A DNA stretch of 64,000 nucleotides from Oopsacas minuta (lineage: Eukaryota; Animalia; Porifera). How positions within the stretch are numbered: the first letter of the stretch is position 1; the number at the start of each line of letters is the position of its first letter. Of the stretch, positions 1 to 22,103 are shown one piece after another. A program made the position numbers and the translations under genes. The DNA lies in assembly GCA_024704765.1 (NCBI GenBank), contig JAKMXF010000353.1:62001-126000 (forward strand). Reading direction: 5' to 3'. The notes beneath the pieces were generated by a model, which saw nothing but the letters and a program-made list of their open reading frames with translations, made no database searches and had not been told where the DNA came from.

Positions 1-343
1 GCACCTGATTACTAGCATATTTATTAATCTCCAGTAACCAATGCTTCACGTTATCAAACGATTCCCTATCTGTGACGTCATATACCACGATGATACCGTG
101 AGCACCTCTGTAGTACGATGAAGTTATCGTCCTGAATCGTTCCTGTCCAGCTGTGTCCCAAATTTGTAGTTTCACGGTCTTATTGTCGAGTGTCAGTGTT
201 TTTATTTTGAAGTCGACACCGATAGTTGAGATATACGAGTCAGAGAAGGTGTCGTCTGCAAAACGTAGCAGTAAACTGCTTTTCCCAACGCCGGAGTCAC
301 CGATGAGAAGAACTTTGAAAAGATAGTCGTATTCGCCGCTCAT
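1..343 (-). CDS. RAB1: Rab1-family small GTPase, 5' part (runs off the window edge; not in the ORF track)
   Basis: ATG at 343; translation [49 protein letters not shown]...[35 protein letters not shown] has the G1-G3 motifs and Rab1 signature; no intron in the 114 visible codons. Confidence 0.96.
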
Positions 344-1080: not shown

Positions 1081-4000
1081 GCGATTATTGACAAATCTCC
1101 CCGAGAACCTCAAAGAGAGGTCTCAGAGCCCCCCGTAAATCTACACCAATGTTTAGATGCCTTTTCAAGAGAGGAGGAGTTAGGGGGAGATGAAATGTGG
1201 TAAGTTCAGACACCCTTGCTAATTTTATAATTGAATTAACTATATAAGGCCCTGTTAATAAGAATCTTGTTTCATCTCCGTATGACATCCCTCTAAGCAT
1301 GCAGGGGAGGAAGCATTCCATATTTCATTATTTATGACGTCCTCATAAGATAAAGTGTCCAATTCATGGAAATATTTCAATGAAACAAATTCCAACTAAC
1401 AGCAGCCTTATATACGTATTTTCACACCTGTATATTAGGTATTGTAAGAAATGTGAAGACCTACGATCAGCTACTAAGAAATTAGAGATATTCAGATTAC
1501 CCCCATTTCTTGTGAGTTAATTTAATAATACGATAAAAGGAGTACATAACACCTTCTAAAGGGGTGTCTTGGGACCCGAATATGGTAGCCTCCACAACCG
1601 GTGCCTCTGGAAACGGGGGAACTTCTGGAACGAAGTTAAAATCAATACAGCCAACTCCTAATTTCATACAAATGAACCTTCACAAACCGGGTTACATTGT
1701 GTGTACATACTTAGATTACTGTGGGCCCTCTCTAATTGTCCACTTCGAACCCCATTGTCTACTGATAGACAATTAGAGAGGACCCACTGCTTGTATAATT
1801 GTCGGTAACACACCGCTGGGTGTCAAATGTGATAGTTATATGATTATTTAAAATATAGATAATTCACTTGAAAAGATTTCAATTCTCCAACGGACGTTGG
1901 GCCAAATCTCAAATTCCAGTAACTTTCCCGTTTGAGAATCTCCAACCAGTACCAAATGATGGAGAACAAGCTAATGCACCCCAGCAACCAAACTCTGAGA
2001 TTAGAATGTTGGAAGCTACTAATGATGAAATTACACCTATTGGTGATGGTAATATATTTTCTTATTTTTTGACACCTTTCAATAACTCATCCGTTCCCAA
2101 CCTATTCCACACACTGACCCCTGTGCCAATTCTAAAATATTATGTAGACTACACCTTGGGAACGCTGCTTGAGTTTGGGGCAGGACCATCTATAGTCAGT
2201 CCCGCAAGGAGTGGCGTTCATTAAATGAGATGCTAACCTATTTTCTAAATATTTGTGTCTTTACAGATAACGCTGAGATGAACACAAAACCAGCAAAACT
2301 CTCACCTATAGAACTCCAACCAATAGAAGATCACACCTCAAGAAATAAAGTCTACGATCTATACGCTATGACGGTGAGTAATTAAACTGTACTCCGCTAA
2401 TAGGGTCACATCGGACCAGACCAATTTGGCCCCATTAACCAGTGGCTCTATTAAGCAGAGTCTACTGTGATTATGTTTATAAATATTCTAAATTCCTTAG
2501 ACACACTATGGTTACCTAGGAGGAGGCCATTATGTATCATTCGCGAAAAGTAATCAAGACAATAATTGGTATTATTACAATGATTCTTCGTGTAAAGTGA
2601 GTTACTATTATTTATTGCTCTCTGCTACTCAGCAGGACTGTATTGATAAGTCTTTAGGTGTCAAATTGGGCTCACTAGCGTCGATGGGGACATGTACCAC
2701 CCACAAATTTTACCGCTAATAAGTACACAGGCGACCATTTCGTCATATCAGACATTCTGGGTCTCTGATATTTATTCCAGTGGGGCTCACAAGGTGTCAA
2801 TTCCTGTCCACATTGGGTACGGTCAGACAACAATTGACCCTTGCGGACTATTATAAATATTGAAATAATAAATGAAGGCAGATATATATATAAAGGTGTG
2901 AATTAGTAATCTAACTCCCTTAAAATCTGAGCAATCAATTCGCTTACTCGTTCTTCTTCAAGATCAGTCCTATCTCTTGTTTTATTTTGACATAATCTTT
3001 TAACACCCCCAGGTGTGAAAATATTATATTTCACACATTCCTGAGTGATCGCGCGCTTTAATTTTAGATATTCTAATTCCTGAGTTGGTGTCAATTTCTC
3101 TTGATTCGGTAATGACTTCATTTCGGTTGGTTCCAGTTCCAATTTGAATGTTTCACCCGGTTTGAACTCTGCGTTTTCATTGGTTACATCAGTTTCACAT
3201 TTAGTTCCATTTGTGATATCTTTAGTTCCAGTTTGTTCTTCTAATTGATTTTCTGAAATATTAAATGTTTCGTTTAAGTTAACATTCTTTAATGCAGTAT
3301 TGGTTGCTAGGTCGGATAATGTAATATCTTCACTAGAAAGTACAGAGTCATGGTCTGGATCAGAACTATACTCAGATTCAGTTCTGGTTTCCTAAAAGAA
3401 GCAAAAAGGTGTGAAAATATTATTAATCATATGGTAAATCATGCAAACAGAGATTGGAAAATATCAAAATTGAATTCTACATAACTGATTACCCCTAATA
3501 GCCGTTGAAACGATATTCAAGCATCATTTTGAGTTCGGCCCAAAATGTGTGAAAATTGATTATTCATATGATTAATATTTATATTTACACACCTCAACAA
3601 CCAATGGAATTACATGTTACAGGGGATCCCAAATAGGAAATTTAATATTTTTGTTATTCAAACTTGTAAATTATACCAAATAAGTTTGCTGAGAAAGATT
3701 TTCAACCACATTCCTTACAGTATCCTAGCAACGAGACACAATAACATACACCTGCATAACCTCGTGTTCATTCTGTAAATAATATACTCACATCATCTTA
3801 TTATTGTTGTTTTTGTTGTTACAAAAATCAATTCATACACAACCATAAATACACAAGATTATCCCTAGCAACCAATTCCTATATCAACTATTCAAATATT
3901 CTTCTAATAACCAATCAAATGGCAGAAAGATATCCAATAGCCCCTCAAGTTGTCGACCCCATAGAGACACACATCAACTACACAATAGATGGTCTCATAG

Positions 4001-7000
4001 GGCTACTGAATGTACGCAGAGTTCAGTTGCTGGAGAAAGTCCGTAACATACGTGAGGAGAAGAGAGCCTCAGAGATCACGAGACAACAAATGATCGACCA
4101 ACTGATAGAAGCACAGGTACACCTCCAAGAAGACATAAGAGAAAATCCCCTCCAGTCGATGCACGAGAGAATTGTACGAGAAATGGAGGACAAATTACGA
4201 GACCTGCAAAATAATATCCCCGTAGAGACCCGATTAAAGTGGAAGTGTGACACACGTGACCTAGAAACGAGCATTTCCCGTCTAGGAGAGATTGTACTTG
4301 TACCAGTAGGAGTACCAGATTATGCTAAATTCCAAACTTCCACTGTTGCTACTGGGGAGGAAGGTATAGGTCCTGGCGAGTTGATTGCTCCATACGGTGT
4401 AGCTATACATGAAGATACACACCAAATATTCGTAGCTAATAGTTGCCATAACAGAGTAGAGATATTCTCTGATACAGGAGAGTACCTCAATCAGCTGGGT
4501 GTAGGACAGGAGTATACGCCATACGGTATAGCTATACACAGAGAGAATGTGTATGTCAGCTACGTGGGAGATCACACTATTAACCAATTGACACTAACTG
4601 ACATGAGTATTGTTAGGAAGATAGGAGGTAAGGGATCAAACAACGGACAATTCAAATATCCTAGACAACTAACAACAGATCCCATTGGTCACGTGTTTAT
4701 AGCAGATGGTGGTAACAACAGAATCAGTATACACGACACAGACCTGAACCATCTCCGTAACATTACTCATCAGTCAATGTCAGGACCAGTTGATGTTAAA
4801 GTGTCACGTGACCGCGTGTACGTACTGTGTCCATCTAACAACCCGTGTATGCACGTGCTAACCCTAGAGGGAGACAAGCTACACTCCCTCATTACCAAAG
4901 GACAAGGAATGGATGTGTTATGCCCTGTCTTCTTCTGTCTAGATCCACTTAACAACTTTGTTATTAGCGATAGATACTCTCACTCAATTCGGGTATTCTC
5001 TCCAGAAGGCAATCTCCTACACACTATAGGAACAGAGGGACACCAACAAGGAATGTTCTATAAACCCCAAGGAATAGCTATAACTCCAAACGGGAGATTA
5101 GTTAGTGTATCAGGGAATGAGAACTACCCTCTACAAATATATTACTAATTTGTTTGTTAGTTTGTTTGTTGTTATTTATTTAATTAAAACTCACACTTTT
5201 CTGGTTTTCCAACTTCTTTTCATTAATCTTTTCCGTGTTAAAATATAATTGTCTTATTTTAGACTTAACGTGTTGGTATTTAACATTCCTTTGCATACGT
5301 TTGGTTGCTAGTTGAGTTGCACACACACTTGTTACTAAAGATGGAAAATTTGTTGTTTTACCCAAACATTCCATTCTCGAGGTGTGTTTCCAGGGAATTG
5401 TTGTTGTTGTTGATGTTGTCTTTCGCGAAATTGCTTGTTTTCCCGTTTTAGTTATGCGTGTTTTGCTAAGCGATCGGTTGCTATGGCAATGCTCTAGTTT
5501 AAACAATTCTGAGAATTCCTGTCCCTCTTTCAAATCTTCAAAATCTATAATTAGTAACAAATTAATATTTTCCGAGCAAAATATACTCAAATTTTGAATG
5601 AGAAATGTAGCCAGAAATTGCCCAATAGGGCTTAGACCAAGTACCCCTATGGGAACTAAAAACACCTTTTAGACATCTGTTAATGAGAAACTTGTTTCAG
5701 CTCCCCTAATGTCTATCTAAGCATGCAGCTGGGAAGGCAGCAATTCATGGAAAAACCCAATGACTCTACTTCTAAATACACTGAGTCCTCTCTAATTGTC
5801 CACCAGTGGTCAATAGGGTCCGAAACGGACAATTAGAGAGGACATACTGATGTTAATTAAGCGTGTTAAAGGAGGTCTGTGGATATAAATCACTATTATT
5901 CACCCGTTAGTTAGTAAATATATTGTGTAATTGAATTTCCAATAATGACACTATTCATGTGACAGATAAACTTGATGCGGGCGGTGGAGCTGAAACAAGT
6001 TTACAACCAACAGTGGCCCTTGTATAACTTACAATTTTGTGGCAGTTGAGCATTCTCCAATTCAATTAATAGCTCATTTTTGGCGGGTAACTTAAATCTG
6101 TCACGTGACCGAATACAGCTAACAGCTGATTTAGGAATTGAGGTGTCAATCCTTGATTTTGCGGCTGTTATTCTCTTAGTGTGATTAGCCATGTGAGAAT
6201 CTATCAGCTGATGTGTATATTTGTTGTATGCGACAGGTGTGAAAGGATTCATTTTCAGTTTAAGTTGTTCATCTTTGGAAATTGGTCTCATTCGTATTTG
6301 CGGCATTTTTGTAAAAACTAAAATATAGATTTGGGAAAAGCTGCTTTAATATGAATTATTCTCCCAGACCGGACCAGGGAGAGTAACCTCACCCCCCAGA
6401 GGGGATTCACAATACATATGTTCACCTGCTGTAATATCCTAAAAATATTAAAATAATCCTACATTCCATTCTACTAATAATAGAACAAGCTAATTAACCA
6501 ATCAATTCTAAGCATTTACTTCCTATCATTTCTCTATACGTTTCCGCTTGTTCAATTTCTTCAGAAACCCTGCATTCTGACTGGTCAGGTAGACACATGC
6601 TCTTCTCACAGCTGTTTCAGTCAGTCTAGGCCTATAATGACGTTTCTTTAGAATTTTACGGATCGACTTGTAGACCGCTCTTCTGTTTTTGTTTAGACGG
6701 ATTCGAGTGTGCATCGTTTTGGGACGTTTGGAATGTTTAGGTCGTTTGAGTGACAACACGATTCCACCTTCGGAATGTGGTTTGATACCAATAGTCTTCC
6801 TTGGGACGCTGCCACTGAATTTCTGTGAGTGTTTGTTAGTTAAATTATTGGGTTCTTTTGAAAATCGGAATTTTCCACTTTGAACAATAAATTTAGAGTT
6901 TCTACGTAGAATACTCCATTGTACGTCTTGAGACATTTTATGCTAATTCAGAAATTGGGATTTGAATTACAATAAACATTTAACACCTGTCATATCTGAG

Positions 7001-7699
7001 CTCGAGGGAGCTGATAATTCCTTCGAAATAACCAAGGAAGTTATATGTTTTGCTTTGACAATTTGGGACCATGTTTGTATAATATCAGACTTGGATATAG
7101 GCGGGTAATTCAATATATCCGTGTTGGATATAACTGGAGTTAACTGGAGTTAACTGGAGTTGGCTGTAGTTTACTTTTCTTTGAAAGAAAACTAAGGAAT
7201 TTATACACAAATATGATAATTCTGCCAAGCGAATGAAAATGAGAATACAGCCTATTTTGGGCAGATAGCAAGCTGGTATAGTTTCACTGGGATCCATAGG
7301 GTCCATATAATGTTTTAATAACGGTCGTGAACCGCTAGTTTAAACGGCCCACTTCAATACACGTACCATGGGGCCTATAGCCGTATAGCCGATAAGAACC
7401 TTGTGACACTAGTAGCGGTCCTAGGAGAGCAAACAGGGCATTTCCCCTTGAGTGATACCCTTAAAATACAAGAGGGCAATTTTACGAGACCGAATTTTGA
7501 GTAAATTTCTTATTTTTAGCGAACAGGAGAAGAAAAGGTAGCAAAAGAGCCGGCATACCTGTTATTCTATAAACAACAGGGAGAACTCAATATTGACAAA
7601 ATTAGTGGGGATCTTCATAATTTCGAAGATGAACCTGACAGTGATGACGAAACAGAAGAGAAAGCTGATCACCCTAGACCCAAGTGTTTTCCGATGTAA
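1081..7699 (+). CDS. USP32: USP32-like ubiquitin-specific protease, 3' part; exons 1081-1199, 1439-1511, 1859-2048, 2267-2373, 2501-2596, 7520-7699; 5' exons not found in the window
   Basis: All junctions are GT-AG and phase-compatible. Spliced protein reads PVNLHQCLDAFSREEELGGDEMWYCKKCEDLRSATKKLEIFRLPPFLIIHLKRFQFSNGRWAKSQ...YDLYAMTTHYGYLGGGHYVSFAK...WYYYNDSSCK|RTGEEKVAKEPAYLLFYKQQG...KCFPM*, covering the USP His box and terminal AYLLFY box, and resembling the USP32/USP6 C-terminus. Confidence 0.88.
1721..1787. repeat. Hairpin/MITE-like repeat (CCTCTCTAATTGTC...GACAATTAGAGAGG) in a USP32 intron
   Basis: 14-bp perfect inverted repeat at 1727-1740 and 1768-1781; the same arms recur at 5785-5843 and near 16918-16975. 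Confidence 0.75.
2903..6306 (-). CDS. SPATA7: SPATA7-like ciliary protein, 370 aa; exons 6306-6033, 5544-5195, 3391-2903
   Basis: Exon 1 HQLIDSHMANHTKRITAAKSRIDTSIPKS resembles the SPATA7 N-terminal block. Exon 3 QELEYLKLKRAITQECVKYNIFT...RL...DLEEERVSELIAQILREL resembles its C-terminal block. Phases match (274+350+489 = 1113 nt). Family call is by motif recognition, not a search. Confidence 0.75.
3919..5148 (+). CDS. Intronless NHL-repeat beta-propeller protein with N-terminal coiled coil (TRIM-like, no RING or B-box), 409 aa
   Basis: Repeats such as PYGVAIHEDTHQIFVANSCHNRVEIF, FKYPRQLTTDPIGHVFIADGGNNRISIH and FYKPQGIAITPNGRLV are NHL blades; the N-terminal ~110 aa are helical. Confidence 0.9.
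   Translation: MAERYPIAPQVVDPIETHINYTIDGLIGLLNVRRVQLLEKVRNIREEKRASEITRQQMIDQLIEAQVHLQEDIRENPLQSMHERIVREMEDKLRDLQNNIPVETRLKWKCDTRDLETSISRLGEIVLVPVGVPDYAKFQTSTVATGEEGIGPGELIAPYGVAIHEDTHQIFVANSCHNRVEIFSDTGEYLNQLGVGQEYTPYGIAIHRENVYVSYVGDHTINQLTLTDMSIVRKIGGKGSNNGQFKYPRQLTTDPIGHVFIADGGNNRISIHDTDLNHLRNITHQSMSGPVDVKVSRDRVYVLCPSNNPCMHVLTLEGDKLHSLITKGQGMDVLCPVFFCLDPLNNFVISDRYSHSIRVFSPEGNLLHTIGTEGHQQGMFYKPQGIAITPNGRLVSVSGNENYPLQIYY
5668..6012. mobile_element. Dispersed non-autonomous element with subterminal inverted repeats (AAACTTGTTTCAGCTCC) and an internal 17-bp hairpin, in SPATA7 intron 1
   Basis: Near-identical inverted copy at 16749-17133; inverted repeats at 5688-5704 and 5986-6002; hairpin at 5785-5843. 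Confidence 0.8.
6526..6936 (-). CDS. RPL28: 60S ribosomal protein L28 (eL28), intronless, 136 aa
   Basis: MSQDVQWSILRRNSKFIV...FSKEPNNLTNKHSQKFSG...RKTIGI...YRPRLTETAVRRA follows the eL28 pattern (QW..R..S.F...EPNNL...YRP.L...A.RRA). Confidence 0.93.
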   Translation of the reverse strand: MSQDVQWSILRRNSKFIVQSGKFRFSKEPNNLTNKHSQKFSGSVPRKTIGIKPHSEGGIVLSLKRPKHSKRPKTMHTRIRLNKNRRAVYKSIRKILKKRHYRPRLTETAVRRACVYLTSQNAGFLKKLNKRKRIEK

Positions 7700-15997: not shown

Positions 15998-16748
15998 CAA
16001 TTTTCACACCTTGTGTTCATTTTTGATACCACATTATTTTGTCACTAGTAAACTGTGTTTGCATACTTCATTAAACTCCAATAGATGTAGTGTATTTTTG
16101 AATAAGGGGTTTTCGTCCGAACCAAAAACTCTTTTCGGAATTTCTGTGAGATTTATTAAGACAATCAGGATTTGTTTGTCAGATTAAATGGGCATTTCTT
16201 TCGGGTATAATTTTTAGTTTTGGCGCCTTAAATTTGTCCAAATTCTAAATATAGTAACAACTATGAGAAATGCTTAACAGATAATTAATAGCAAAAATAA
16301 CCTGTAATTGTTTTCTGTATATATTCGCCGGTAAAAATGTGTAAATATAACAGCCCAAGGGTGTTGACAAGTGGAACCATAAACAGCAATAAACATTGAA
16401 TTATTGTATTCAAATCTTGATAACATCTGCTGGCATTCAATCGCGAGACAATAGGCCACTTTCCAACCATATGGCCACTATTAGAGCCACATTATCAATG
16501 AGATTAGTAATCATAGAAATGTGTTTATGAGAACTTTGAATAAATGTAATACACTATTCACCTGATCCTCATGTCAACTACTAATGATTACCCAAACTAT
16601 GATATGCTTTTCAAATCGGGCTTCGATCGACTTTATATTGAAACCATATCGAAAATACGACGTATCTGCCGCCATATGGCTGATACAGGCTTCATAGAAT
16701 GGTATTACGTGAGTTTAGAAAGGTAGTAATAGGAATTGATAAGGCCAA

Positions 16749-17133
16749 TGTTGGTTGTAAACTTGTTTCAGCTCCACCGCCCGCATCAAGTTTATCTGTC
16801 ACATGAATAGTGTCATTATTGGAAATTCAATTACACAATATATTTACTAACTAACGGGTGAATAATAGTGATTTATATCCACAGACCTCCTTTAACACGC
16901 TTAATTAACATCAGTATGTCCTCTCTAATTGTCCGTTTCGGACCCTATTGACCACTGGTGGACAATTAGAGAGGAACAACCGTATTTGGAAGTAGAGTCA
17001 TTGAAATATTTCATGAATTGAACACTTTGTATTTATGATAACTCACAAAATAATGAATTGCTGCCTTCCCAGCTGCATGCTTAGATAGACATTAGGGGAG
17101 CTGAAACAAGTTTCTCATTAACAGATGTCTAAA
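16749..17133. mobile_element. Second, inverted copy of the element at 5668-6012
   Basis: About 230 nt (16749-16975) is the near-exact reverse complement of 5785-6012, and 17055-17133 matches 5668-5745. Confidence 0.8.
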
Positions 17134-20888: not shown

Positions 20889-22103
20889 TTAACAGAAAAT
20901 GTGTAATCTAAATTTAGTATAAGAAGAAGTACAAATAATTTTGTTATCATTAGTGACTACAATACTCCAAGGTGTGATTCTCTTGTCCTCTTCCTGAGTA
21001 TCTCCCAGTGTGTGTAACAGAGATCCTTCCTGAGAGAATACTTTTATGTTTGCAGCATAACAGTCACCCATGATAATATTCTGTTTCTTATCGAAACAGA
21101 ATGAATAGCAACCTCTAACTTGTTCATTACCCTGTTTACCCCATGAAATAAATGATCGGAGCTTTTCACCAGTACTATTGAATACATGTAGACACGGATT
21201 GTCTGTAAAGCTCAGAACGTAAACCTTATTGTCAAGGAATTTTAGGGCAGATGGTTCCGTCATTGTGCTGTGTGTAATGTATTGTTTGTGTTTCAGTTGA
21301 GGTGTCATAACAACAACTCTGTTGTTATAAGTATCTGTAATAAATACATCCTTGTTAGGAGCAATGGTGATGCTATTAGGATAATCGAACTCTCTTTTAC
21401 CAGATCCTGTCTCTCCTACTTTAGTTATTAGATTGAAATTGGGTAATTTATACCGGAATATGCAATGTTGCCATGTGTCAGTGATATAAACATCCTCACC
21501 ACTTATTGCTATACCTGATGGTGCATGAACCTGTCCCTCACAGAATCTATTAATGAATTCTCCTCTGATAGAGAATACACAGATACTACCATAACCACCT
21601 GCTACGTAGATACGCTGAGATGTTTCATCATAAGCTATACCTCTAGCAATCAATCTCTCCCCTACTGATATTGAAGGCTGTAGGAGTGCGGGGTAGTTAG
21701 GAGTTGAAATGATTTCCCTCTCTACCAGTTGTCCTAACACAGAGATAGCTTCCTCCAGCTTTTGAGCGTTACAGTCAAACAGCACTTCTGTTTCCTTCAC
21801 CTTAACCTCCAGTTGCTTAATCTTTGTCTCGATGTCCTTCATTATGTTTTCTCTCGTGGAGTGTAGCAGGTTCTGCTTCATCCCTGCTTGGAGATTAGTT
21901 TTAGCGTTGGACAGCTCTTCTAGACTATTAATGCGAACTGTTTCTGCAGCTTGTCTGTCCTTCTGTTTCTGTCTGAACTCGTTGATGAGCTGTACTCGTC
22001 TATCGTTGAGACAAAGTACCAGACGGTCGAATGTGTTGTTAATACTTGCCTCTGTCGGGTCCATGACGAGAGGAGCTTCTAATTCTGGATATCTTGCAGC
22101 CAT
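20889..22103 (-). CDS. Second intronless coiled-coil plus NHL-repeat protein, 404 aa from the likely ATG at 22103
   Basis: Start MAARYPELEAPLVMDP parallels MAERYPIAPQVVDP of the 3919 gene; NHL blades PSGIAISGEDVYITD and FDYPNSITIAPNKDVFITDTYNNRV. Confidence 0.88.
   Translation of the reverse strand: MAARYPELEAPLVMDPTEASINNTFDRLVLCLNDRRVQLINEFRQKQKDRQAAETVRINSLEELSNAKTNLQAGMKQNLLHSTRENIMKDIETKIKQLEVKVKETEVLFDCNAQKLEEAISVLGQLVEREIISTPNYPALLQPSISVGERLIARGIAYDETSQRIYVAGGYGSICVFSIRGEFINRFCEGQVHAPSGIAISGEDVYITDTWQHCIFRYKLPNFNLITKVGETGSGKREFDYPNSITIAPNKDVFITDTYNNRVVVMTPQLKHKQYITHSTMTEPSALKFLDNKVYVLSFTDNPCLHVFNSTGEKLRSFISWGKQGNEQVRGCYSFCFDKKQNIIMGDCYAANIKVFSQEGSLLHTLGDTQEEDKRITPWSIVVTNDNKIICTSSYTKFRLHIFC

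What the first reader, a model, noticed from the sequence alone, without database searches (positions are those of the whole stretch)
2597..7519. Three-level nested genes: USP32 (+) contains SPATA7 (-), which contains an NHL gene (+); RPL28 (-) sits in the same intron
Seen: the USP32 His-box exon ends at SSCK|GTGAGT (2596). The obligatory terminal box (PAYLLFYKQQG...CFPM*) first appears 4.9 kb later at 7520, behind a TTTTTAG acceptor in the matching phase 0. That 4923-nt intron holds the complete RPL28 and a phase-consistent 3-exon SPATA7-like gene. SPATA7 intron 2 (3392-5194) holds the complete 1230-nt NHL CDS on the opposite strand. Established: single-level nested genes are known in animals, but two-level nesting with alternating strands is rare. 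Inference: the USP32 pre-mRNA must read through the NHL polyA site on its own strand and run antisense to a ribosomal-protein gene that is normally highly expressed, so transcription may be coupled or interfering.
Basis: partly seen in the sequence, partly recalled or inferred. Interest (0 to 1): 0.85.

Follow-up and report, generated by a model that had tools for sequence, protein, structure and literature searches.

The report
Genes nested inside sponge USP32 gene
In the glass sponge Oopsacas minuta, the last intron of the USP32 gene holds a ribosomal-protein gene and a SPATA7-like gene that itself holds an NHL gene, and related sponges keep this layout; such nesting, even two levels deep, is already known in compact early-animal genomes, so the main news is that the public annotation cuts both host genes into pieces.

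Summary
The window is Oopsacas minuta contig JAKMXF010000353.1.

- **USP32 junction.** The His-box exon ends at 2596 (NDSSCK|GTGAGT). The only conserved continuation is the exon at 7520-7699, which encodes AYLLFYKQQG, an acidic tail and the CaaX box CFPM.
- **Contents of the 4,923-nt intron.** It holds RPL28 (6936-6526, -) and a 370-aa SPATA7-like gene (-; exons 6306-6033, 5544-5195, 3391-2903). The 1,803-nt second intron of that gene holds an intact 409-aa NHL gene (3919-5148, +).
- **RNA.** None could be examined. The public runs found were DNA.
- **Comparative evidence.** Four other glass-sponge-like assemblies keep the same order and strands, with a GT donor, a pyrimidine-rich AG acceptor and a CaaX end at the USP32 junction. 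In three of them SPATA7 exons B and C lie only about 50-90 nt apart, with no NHL gene. So B and C belong to one gene, and the NHL gene, a member of a huge intronless family, looks like a later insertion.
- **Annotation.** NCBI splits USP32 and SPATA7, truncates USP32 at 2719 and misses a nested Rab1-like gene.
- **Novelty.** Nesting is common in glass sponges, and doubly nested genes were described in a ctenophore. Earlier notes of this scan (Dicer, VPS13) reached the same conclusion for this genome.

This is a real but ordinary case, useful mainly as an annotation correction.

The parts
1081..2596 (+). USP32 catalytic-domain exons inside the window: 1081-1199, 1439-1511, 1859-2048, 2267-2373 and 2501-2596 (the His box, ending NDSSCK)
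   Evidence: The joined exons give an open frame with GT..AG introns of 127-347 nt. Pfam UCH matches 2501-2596. USP15 catalytic-core chains match at residues 295-324 of 349. All five exons are conserved in L003-L008.
2597..7519 (+). Last intron of USP32, 4,923 nt, GTGAGT...TTATTTTTAG, phase 0. It hosts three protein-coding units, one of them inside another.
   Evidence: The equivalent intron in the relatives is 3,763, 3,480, 3,873 and 2,425/2,441 nt, with a GT donor and a pyrimidine-rich AG acceptor.
7520..7699 (+). Terminal USP32 exon: the last strand of the catalytic domain (AYLLFYKQQG), an acidic tail and the CaaX box CFPM, then the stop
   Evidence: It is 64-78% identical at the protein level in four other assemblies, each ending in CaaX (CPVM, CPLM, CPVF). 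dN/dS is about 0.1. A C-terminal CaaX box is a stated USP32 hallmark (PMC10485055).
6526..6936 (-). RPL28 (eL28), a complete single-exon gene of 136 aa, antisense to USP32
   Evidence: Pfam Ribosomal_L28e, E 5e-29. It is 79-92% identical in the relatives at the same position. dN/dS is 0.04. An ATTAAA signal lies at 6350 on the minus strand.
2903..6306 (-). SPATA7-like (HSD3) gene, 370 aa, three exons: 6306-6033, 5544-5195 and 3391-2903 (stop included). Antisense to USP32.
   Evidence: The joined frame is open. Pfam HSD3 matches exon A. The exon A|B junction equals the NCBI model LOD99_9197 and a Trinity transcript of a relative (P0008). The exon B|C junction has a conserved position and phase in five species, with a 50-90 nt intron in three of them. 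An AATAAA signal lies at 2776.
3392..5194 (-). SPATA7-like intron 2, 1,803 nt, GTGAGT...TTCTTTTAG, phase 0. It hosts the NHL gene.
   Evidence: Without the 1,558-bp NHL cassette the intron would be about 245 nt.
3919..5148 (+). Intronless NHL-repeat gene, 409 aa. It is antisense to its direct host SPATA7-like and on the same strand as USP32.
   Evidence: ORF. Pfam NHL, with no RING or B-box match. A positional counterpart exists in L003/L004 (66% aa identity, dN/dS 0.42). It belongs to a family with 894 hits at E<=1e-10. An ATTAAA signal lies at 5183.
3631..5188 (+). Duplicated NHL cassette: the gene with 288 bp of 5' flank and 40 bp of 3' flank. Its 3' end lies 6 nt from the donor of SPATA7 exon B.
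   Evidence: It is 94% identical over 1,563 aligned bases to a second copy in an upstream USP32 intron (window -3328..-4888, i.e. L002 9539-11099).
1..343 (-). 5' part of a single-exon Rab1-like gene (203 aa; the rest lies upstream of the window). It is nested antisense in another USP32 intron and is absent from the NCBI gene list.
   Evidence: ORF at L002 5868-6479. Best solved relatives are Rab1A/Rab1B, E 7e-88. It is not among the called genes. It is conserved at the same place in all relatives, 90-94% aa identity.

Best explanation
This is a true, evolutionarily old nested-gene locus in the compact genome of the glass sponge Oopsacas minuta.

**The host.** One USP32 gene spans at least 18.7 kb, from about window -11,000 to 7,699 on the + strand. 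It has EF-hands, USP32_N, DUSP, UBL, a split UCH domain and a CaaX end.

**The last intron.** This intron (2597-7519) must be spliced out to join the His box to the final catalytic strand and the prenylation box. It contains two independent antisense transcription units: RPL28 and a three-exon SPATA7-like gene.

**The inner level.** In the lineage leading to O. minuta and one relative, a member of a massively expanded intronless NHL family entered the short second intron of the SPATA7-like gene, antisense to it. That produced the second level of nesting.

**Other nested genes.** O. minuta later copied the same 1.56-kb NHL cassette into an upstream USP32 intron. Another USP32 intron carries a Rab1-like gene.

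**The annotation.** They cut USP32 into an 870-aa and a 572-aa gene, the latter ending by read-through at 2719. They cut SPATA7-like into a 207-aa and a 164-aa gene. The downstream halves were given 2-residue first exons.

**Shown and inferred.** Shown: gene content, splice signals, phases, conservation and purifying selection. Inferred: that the junctions are used in O. minuta mRNA, and that each nested gene has its own promoter and poly(A) site.
For: **USP32 identity.** The NCBI models at this locus carry USP32_N, EF-hand, DUSP, Ubiquitin_3 and UCH in the 870-aa piece and UCH in the 572-aa piece.

**One USP32 gene, not two.** The two pieces are adjacent exons about 84 nt apart in L007. They are 2.26 kb apart in O. 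minuta, where the gap holds the NHL duplicate.

**More sequence must follow the His box.** The His-box exon matches Pfam UCH only to position 235 of 254. It matches USP15 catalytic cores with 25 residues still to follow.

**The 7520 exon supplies it.** The exon encodes AYLLFYKQQG and a CaaX box. Human USP32 is described as the only deubiquitinase with a C-terminal CaaX box (PMC10485055).

**The junction is conserved.** In all five genomes the His exon ends NDSSCK|GT. The last exon follows a pyrimidine-rich AG, reads (R/Q)T.E..V..EPAYLLFYKQQGELNI.KISG and ends in CaaX. RPL28 and SPATA7-like lie between them on the opposite strand. dN/dS of the last exon is about 0.1, with saturated dS.

**The NCBI tail is intronic.** The read-through tail (2597-2719) is not conserved in L003.

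**SPATA7 exon C needs an upstream exon.** Coding conservation of exon C starts exactly at its acceptor, which is preceded by an in-frame stop, in every species. So exon C cannot start a gene. In L005, L006 and L007 it lies 50-90 nt after exon B, across a GT..AG intron that changes frame.

**Some transcript support.** Intron 1 splicing is seen in a Trinity transcript of a relative and in the NCBI model.

**The NCBI first exons look ad hoc.** The first exons of the downstream halves are ATGCAG|GT at 3757 and ATGATG|GT at L002 9704, both inside NHL cassette flanks.

**The NHL gene.** The ORF is intact and has a positional counterpart in L003/L004 with dN/dS 0.42.
Against: - No RNA of O. minuta could be examined. 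Runs X1-X3 gave genomic contigs colinear with the window and no splice joints, and X5 is DNA-like from a relative. Use of the 2596^7520 and 5195^3391 junctions is therefore inferred.
- A second AYxLFY-like motif (SYLLFY, 2968) lies on the USP32 strand 370 nt after the His exon, with in-phase AG sites at 2931 and 2967.
- Exon C alone finds no full-length SPATA7 outside glass sponges. Only the N-terminal 55 residues tie the gene to the family.
- O. minuta NHL paralogues form one clade that excludes the positional copy of L003. A single shared insertion is therefore not proven.
Confidence: 0.88

Rival explanations
1. The public annotation is right. USP32 ends by read-through at 2719. The SPATA7 N-part (5180-6291) and the 164-aa gene (2903-3757) are separate genes, nothing is nested, and the 7520 exon is a relic.
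For: This is how GCA_024704765.1 is annotated. No RNA junction was seen here.
Against: - A USP domain ending at 2719 lacks its last strand.
- The read-through tail is not conserved.
- The 7520 exon is under purifying selection and keeps its acceptor and CaaX box in five genomes.
- Exon C has no conserved start codon, and it follows exon B across a 50-90 nt intron in three species.
- The annotated first exons are 2 residues long and lie in NHL cassette flanks.
- The O. minuta annotation is reported to list only 83 nested genes, against 2,432 in A. vastus. The authors of that paper attribute low nested-gene counts in some genomes to the annotation method (PMC10282587).
Confidence: 0.04
2. USP32 mainly uses a nearer terminal exon at 2932-3003 or 2968-3003 (..SYLLFYFDIIF stop). 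This exon overlaps the 3' end of SPATA7 exon C in antisense, so the major USP32 transcript would not span the nested genes.
For: The strict motif occurs only twice in all six frames of the 64 kb. This copy is on the right strand, with in-phase AG sites at 2931 and 2967.
Against: - The motif and its stop are not kept in L003, which reads ..HFYFVYFSDTIF.. there.
- Its residual similarity is explained by lying antisense to conserved SPATA7 coding sequence.
- It lacks the KQQG and CaaX tail that every relative keeps at the distal exon.
- The 2931 acceptor has a weak pyrimidine tract.
- The 2967 acceptor would delete the 11-residue linker.
Confidence: 0.03
3. The outer nesting is real, but the innermost NHL copy is a decaying passenger of a mobile, multi-copy cassette rather than a working gene. 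The third level would then be structural only.
For: - The cassette is duplicated at 94% identity within the same USP32 gene. dN/dS between the two copies is 1.13.
- The family is very large, and summed contig depth over 3641-5232 is tens of times the flanking depth.
- Species-specific clades point to fast turnover.
Against: - The window copy keeps its ATG and an uninterrupted 409-codon frame. The other copy is the one that has ATG changed to TTG.
- dN/dS against the positional copy in L003 is 0.42.
- An ATTAAA signal follows the stop.
Confidence: 0.12
4. The NHL genes in the SPATA7 intron of O. minuta and of the L003/L004 species arose by two independent insertions, or by gene conversion, rather than one shared ancestral insertion.
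For: - 17 O. minuta paralogues (68-88% identical to the window copy) form a clade with support 0.95 that excludes the L003 positional copy (66%).
- NHL dS (0.54) is lower than that of the neighbouring genes (0.95-1.3).
Against: - The intron, the orientation and the placement are the same. The stop lies 47 nt (O. minuta) and 70 nt (L003) from the end of exon B.
- The target intron is only 50-90 nt long in the species without the insert.
Confidence: 0.2

Closest known systems
Nested intronic genes of glass sponges (Aphrocallistes vastus genome paper, PMC10282587)
   Same: Short, mostly single-exon genes lie inside introns of longer genes in a compact hexactinellid genome. Many are conserved between species. 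Automatic annotation misses them or splits the host.
   Different: That paper counts only 83 nested genes in the O. minuta annotation and does not describe this locus. Here the host is USP32, with five nested genes in three introns, one of them two levels deep.
Doubly nested intronic genes of the ctenophore Hormiphora californensis (PMC8527503)
   Same: A nested gene lies inside the intron of another nested gene. Some nested genes run parallel to the outer host. That paper reports 484 such genes among 2,357 nested genes.
   Different: A different phylum. There the models rest on Iso-Seq. Here they rest on comparative genomics only.
Human USP32 (review PMC10485055)
   Same: EF-hands, DUSP, UBL, a USP catalytic domain and a C-terminal CaaX prenylation box.
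   Different: Whether the human gene has any nested genes was not examined here. The sponge CaaX box is CFPM.
Host/nested transcriptional interference, e.g. mouse H13/Mcts2 (PMC13309782) and the mammalian host/nested pair survey (PMC11694760)
   Same: An active gene inside an intron may provoke premature polyadenylation or interference in the host. The co-oriented NHL gene with ATTAAA at 5183 could do this to USP32.
   Different: Nothing of the kind was measured here. It is only a possibility raised by the layout.

Membership tests
Nested intronic gene (host/nested pair) | The whole nested transcription unit lies within one intron of the host | tested here: met
   The coding parts of RPL28, SPATA7-like and NHL, and their candidate poly(A) signals, lie between 2597 and 7519. 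The same holds in four relatives. UTR ends are not known.
Nested intronic gene (host/nested pair) | The host intron is really spliced in mRNA of this species | not testable with these tools
   The only runs found were genomic. Support is indirect: conserved donor, acceptor, phase and coding selection.
Doubly nested gene | A nested gene lies inside an intron of a gene that is itself nested | tested here: met
   NHL 3919-5148 lies in SPATA7-like intron 5194-3392, and that gene lies in USP32 intron 2597-7519. That exons B and C belong to one gene is shown by the 50-90 nt intron between them in L005, L006 and L007.
USP32 | EF-hand / USP32_N / DUSP / UBL in front of a USP (UCH) catalytic domain | tested here: met
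   Precomputed Pfam hits on the two NCBI pieces. Exon colinearity with the relatives shows they are one gene.
USP32 | C-terminal CaaX prenylation box | tested here: met
   CFPM before the stop in O. minuta, and CPVM, CPLM or CPVF in the relatives. The feature is named in PMC10485055. Prenylation itself was not tested.
USP32 | Complete catalytic domain: His box followed by the terminal AYxLFY strand | tested here: met
   The joined exons read ...GGGHYVSFAK...NDSSCK RTGEEKVAKEPAYLLFYKQ. The 19 residues after the junction equal the 19 unmatched positions of the Pfam UCH profile. The joined protein itself could not be sent to Pfam.
SPATA7 / HSD3 (PF15244) | Match to the family profile above the gathering score | tested here: met
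   Exon A scores 33.7 bits against a cut-off of 27, but matches only profile positions 18-74 of 416.
SPATA7 / HSD3 (PF15244) | Similarity over the rest of the protein (exons B and C) to SPATA7 of other animals | tested here: inconclusive
   Neither exon matches HSD3 even at E<=10. phmmer of exon C against 1.84 billion representatives finds only short glass-sponge fragments. No full-length non-sponge SPATA7 could be fetched, because of the length window of the search tool.
Ribosomal protein eL28 | Full-length match to Ribosomal_L28e | tested here: met
   E 5e-29, profile positions 1-110 of 115.
TRIM-NHL (the NCBI name 'TRIM71-like' for paralogues) | RING, B-box and coiled coil in front of the NHL propeller | tested here: not met
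   Pfam finds only NHL-type matches in the 409-aa protein at E<=0.01, with no RING or B-box. It is an NHL-repeat protein, not a TRIM.
Rab1 | Best similarity to Rab1/Ypt1 among solved Rab proteins | tested here: met
   Rab1A E 7e-88, Rab1B 2e-86 and Ypt1 6e-79, against Rab35 3e-62.

The most novel reading that the evidence does not exclude
The nest may be kept for a reason, not just tolerated. USP32 has carried RPL28, a SPATA7-like gene and a Rab1-like gene, all antisense, in the same introns across glass sponges whose synonymous sites are saturated. This could reflect regulatory coupling, for example antisense transcription of a highly expressed ribosomal-protein gene setting USP32 output. The later same-strand NHL insertion, with its own poly(A) signal, would then create a switch between full-length and truncated, inactive USP32.
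Probability: 0.1. Interest if true: 0.55.

Novelty: new member of a known kind. Interest (0 to 1): 0.3.

Why it matters
**Corrected gene models in the O. minuta reference.**
- One full-length USP32 with its catalytic end and prenylation box, in place of a truncated pair.
- One 370-aa SPATA7-like gene, in place of two fragments.
- A missing Rab1-like gene.

Gene-content claims about this genome, such as lost or truncated genes, depend on such models.

**A dated example of how a second nesting level arises.** A 50-90 nt intron in three species became 1.6-1.8 kb in two species, by gaining a member of an expanding intronless family.

**What it does not change.** It does not alter what is known about nested genes in general.

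Tried and rejected
1. **RNA evidence.** Depth was flat at about 100-250, there were no GT..AG joints, and depth peaked over repeats and the NHL family. No junction could be tested.
2. **The 59-aa last exon alone.** Against Pfam at E<=10 and against the PDB it gave nothing meaningful. It is too short, and the joined protein has no reference, so it was not sent to any tool.
3. **SPATA7 exon C alone.** phmmer against 1.84 billion representatives found only three short glass-sponge fragments and one spurious repeat protein.
4. **Profile searches.** Profiles of exons A+B and of exon C found only glass-sponge pieces and no transcript spanning B|C.
5. **Alternative terminal exon (SYLLFY at 2968).** Considered because the motif is otherwise unique in the window. 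Rejected as the main exon because it is not conserved.
6. **Rab identity.** My first guess, Rab35, was wrong. It is Rab1-like.
7. **NHL orthology from a family tree.** Not resolvable, because the clades are species-specific.
8. **Species names.** The species behind the ENA assemblies were not identified.


Full report
**Where the window comes from**

The 409-aa NHL protein is encoded, by exact match, on GCA_024704765.1 contig JAKMXF010000353.1. The Aphrocallistes vastus genome paper names accession JAKMXF01 as the Oopsacas minuta assembly (PMC10282587). Window position w equals record position w + 62,000. Loci L001 and L002 extend the view about 14.8 kb upstream.

**The observation**

- The USP exons in the window are 1081-1199, 1439-1511, 1859-2048, 2267-2373 and 2501-2596. 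They join into one open frame with GT..AG introns of 127-347 nt.
- The last of these exons is the His box (...GGGHYVSFAK...NDSSCK), followed by GTGAGT at 2597. Pfam UCH matches it at profile positions 205-235 of 254. Solved USP15 catalytic cores match it at residues 295-324 of 349. So about 20-25 residues of the fold are still missing at 2596.
- The exon at 7520, behind TTATTTTTAG, supplies RTGEEKVAKEPAYLLFYKQQG, an acidic tail and CFPM before the stop.
- Inside the 4,923-nt gap lie three units:
  - RPL28 (136 aa; Pfam E 5e-29).
  - An NHL ORF (409 aa).
  - On the minus strand, a gene whose first exon matches the Pfam SPATA7/HSD3 family above its gathering score.
- I corrected one boundary. 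SPATA7-like exon A ends at 6033 and exon B starts at 5544, which gives a 370-aa protein.

**What the public annotation says**

NCBI lists no nesting here.

- USP32 is two genes. One is an 870-aa piece with USP32_N, EF-hands, DUSP, UBL and the start of UCH. The other is a 572-aa piece with the rest of UCH, which ends by reading through the 2596 donor to a stop at 2719.
- SPATA7-like is also two genes, of 207 aa and 164 aa.
- The two downstream halves begin with 2-residue first exons: ATGCAG|GT at window 3757 and ATGATG|GT at L002 9704. Both lie in the flanks of NHL cassettes. This is what a gene finder that does not allow nesting would produce.
- The A. vastus paper reports 83 nested genes in the O. 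minuta annotation against 2,432 in A. vastus. It attributes low nested-gene counts in some genomes to the annotation method.

**RNA**

The decisive test, junction reads, could not be done. The runs that hold this stretch (X1-X4) gave contigs colinear with the genome, with flat depth and no splice joints. X5 behaves like DNA of a close relative. All statements about splicing in O. minuta are therefore inferences.

**Comparative evidence for the USP32 junction**

A search with SPATA7 exon C found short proteins on large ENA contigs. These gave four more assemblies:

- L003/L004
- L005
- L006
- L007/L008

I take these to be other glass sponges. They share this microsynteny, and their proteins are close to those of O. 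minuta (RPL28 79-92% aa identity, Rab1-like 90-94%). Synonymous sites are saturated or nearly so, with RPL28 dS at least 1.3.

In all of them the order and strands are the same:

1. USP last exon
2. RPL28, on the opposite strand
3. SPATA7-like exons A, B and C, on the opposite strand
4. USP His-box exon and the earlier USP exons
5. Rab1-like gene, on the opposite strand
6. Upstream USP32 exons

In every genome:

- The His exon ends NDSSCK followed by GT.
- The distal exon follows a pyrimidine-rich AG.
- It reads (R/Q)T.E..V..EPAYLLFYKQQGELNI.KISG.
- It ends in a CaaX box (CFPM, CPVM, CPLM or CPVF).

The intron is 4,923, 3,763, 3,480, 3,873 and 2,425/2,441 nt long. dN/dS of the exon is about 0.1. 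A review describes the C-terminal CaaX box as present only in USP32 among human deubiquitinases (PMC10485055). The NCBI read-through tail is not conserved. A tblastx comparison shows no further conserved block specific to the USP strand inside the intron. It also shows that the two annotated USP32 halves are neighbouring exons in L007.

**A possible rival exon**

A scan for the terminal-box motif gave a surprise. The strict motif [AS]Y[LIVM]LFY occurs only twice in all six frames of the 64 kb. One is at 7553. The other is at 2968, on the USP strand, antisense to the end of SPATA7 exon C, with in-phase AG sites at 2931 and 2967.

In L003 the corresponding stretch reads ..HFYFVYFSDTIF.. with no stop at that place. 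It also lacks the KQQG and CaaX tail. I treat it as a coincidence helped by conserved antisense coding sequence. Only RNA can exclude minor use.

**Comparative evidence for SPATA7-like as one gene**

- Coding conservation of exon C begins exactly at its acceptor in all five species, reading ..ES(E/D)YSSDPDH.. or ..SEYSSDPDH... An in-frame stop lies just upstream and there is no conserved ATG. So exon C needs an upstream exon.
- In L005, L006 and L007 that exon is exon B, 50-90 nt away across a GT..AG intron that changes frame.
- In O. minuta and L003/L004 the same junction, phase 0 on both sides, is stretched to 1,803 nt and about 1,630 nt by an NHL gene on the opposite strand.
- Intron 1 splicing agrees with the NCBI model and with a Trinity transcript from a relative (P0008).
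- dN/dS of exon C is 0.3-0.5.
- The family assignment rests on the N-terminal 55 residues only. Exons B and C find no SPATA7 outside glass sponges.

**The innermost gene**

- The NHL ORF belongs to a very large intronless family of about 405-409 aa. The search gave 894 hits at E<=1e-10. At least 17 are O. minuta paralogues at 68-88% identity, some named TRIM71-like by NCBI. The protein has no RING or B-box match.
- The 1,558-bp cassette 3631-5188 has a 94% identical copy in an upstream USP32 intron (window -3328..-4888). That copy is antisense to USP32 and has its ATG changed to TTG. dN/dS between the two copies is 1.13.
- Against the positional copy in L003, dN/dS is 0.42.
- The O. minuta paralogues form one clade that excludes the L003 copy. 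The shared position therefore argues for one old insertion, while the tree leaves gene conversion or a second insertion open.
- The cassette ends 6 nt from the exon B donor, which is intact.

**How it most likely works**

USP32 is transcribed across at least 18.7 kb. Three of its introns carry five other genes:

- An NHL duplicate.
- A Rab1-like gene.
- RPL28.
- The SPATA7-like gene.
- Inside the SPATA7-like gene, NHL.

Four of the five are antisense to USP32, so their poly(A) signals are invisible to the polymerase that transcribes the host. Only NHL 3919-5148 is co-oriented with USP32. Its ATTAAA at 5183 could end some USP32 transcripts early, giving an enzyme without its last strand and lipid anchor. 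This is an inference from the layout and from work on mammalian host/nested pairs (PMC13309782 and PMC11694760). It was not measured.

**Comparison with what is known**

- Nested genes make up about 12% of genes in the glass sponge A. vastus, and many are conserved.
- In the ctenophore H. californensis, 484 of 2,357 nested genes are doubly nested, and many run parallel to the host.
- Two earlier follow-ups of this scan on the same genome, a Dicer gene with six nested genes and a VPS13 gene with five, reached the same verdict: the nesting is real, it is common in these genomes, and the annotation splits the hosts.

So this locus is a new member of a known kind.

**Verdict**

| Question | Answer |
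|---|---|
| Observation | Confirmed |
| Structural reading | Strongly supported by conservation (confidence 0.88) |
| RNA proof | Missing |
| Rarity claim | Not supported |
| Transcriptional coupling | Not tested |
| Interest | 0.3 |

The interest lies mainly in the annotation correction and in a clear example of a short intron capturing a gene.

Noticed in passing
window 1-343 (-), continuing upstream (L002 5868-6479 +): A complete single-exon Rab1-like gene (203 aa, ends in CC) lies antisense in another USP32 intron. It is missing from the NCBI gene list for this contig. It is conserved at the same place in all four relatives.
   Followed up: yes
L002 9539-11099 (window -3328..-4888, minus strand): A second copy of the 1.56-kb NHL cassette, 94% identical, sits between two USP32 exons that are only about 84 nt apart in L007. 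Its ATG is TTG. NCBI calls a 352-aa product from an internal ATG. dN/dS against the window copy is 1.13.
   Followed up: partly
window 2932-3003 (+): A SYLLFY motif followed by a stop lies antisense to the end of SPATA7 exon C. It is the only other strict USP terminal-box motif in all six frames of the 64 kb, and in-phase AG sites lie before it. It is not conserved in L003.
   Followed up: yes
window 5668-6018, 5779-5841 with 1727-1789, 3401-3439, 6972-7146: Dispersed repeats sit inside the introns. One is a 350-bp element (87% identical to 16743-17133) that inflates SPATA7 intron 1 from about 57 nt in L003 to 488 nt. There is also a short hairpin-like element shared with a USP32 intron, and a multi-copy element upstream of RPL28. 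Contig depth peaks over them.
   Followed up: partly
window 6291-6306 (-): The NCBI model of the SPATA7 N-part starts at the ATG at 6291 (MRPISK). The upstream ATG at 6306 (MPQIRMRP) is the one conserved in all relatives.
   Followed up: yes
window 20895-22103 (-): Another NHL-family ORF, 35% identical to the nested one.
   Followed up: no
L007 459-6859 and L008 468-6843: One relative has a tandem array of seven or eight Rab paralogues (51-61% identical to the Rab1-like gene) beside the filamin gene. The array is absent from the O. minuta window.
   Followed up: no
NHL 3919-5148 compared with L003 8366-9589: Synonymous divergence of the NHL pair (0.54) is well below that of the neighbouring RPL28 (1.3) and SPATA7 exon C (0.95) between the same two genomes. 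The cause is unexplained. Gene conversion, a later insertion or noise in the estimate are all possible.
   Followed up: partly
L006 2107-3285 (+): In a third relative a distant NHL-family gene (27% identical) lies among the filamin exons. This suggests the family enters introns repeatedly.
   Followed up: no
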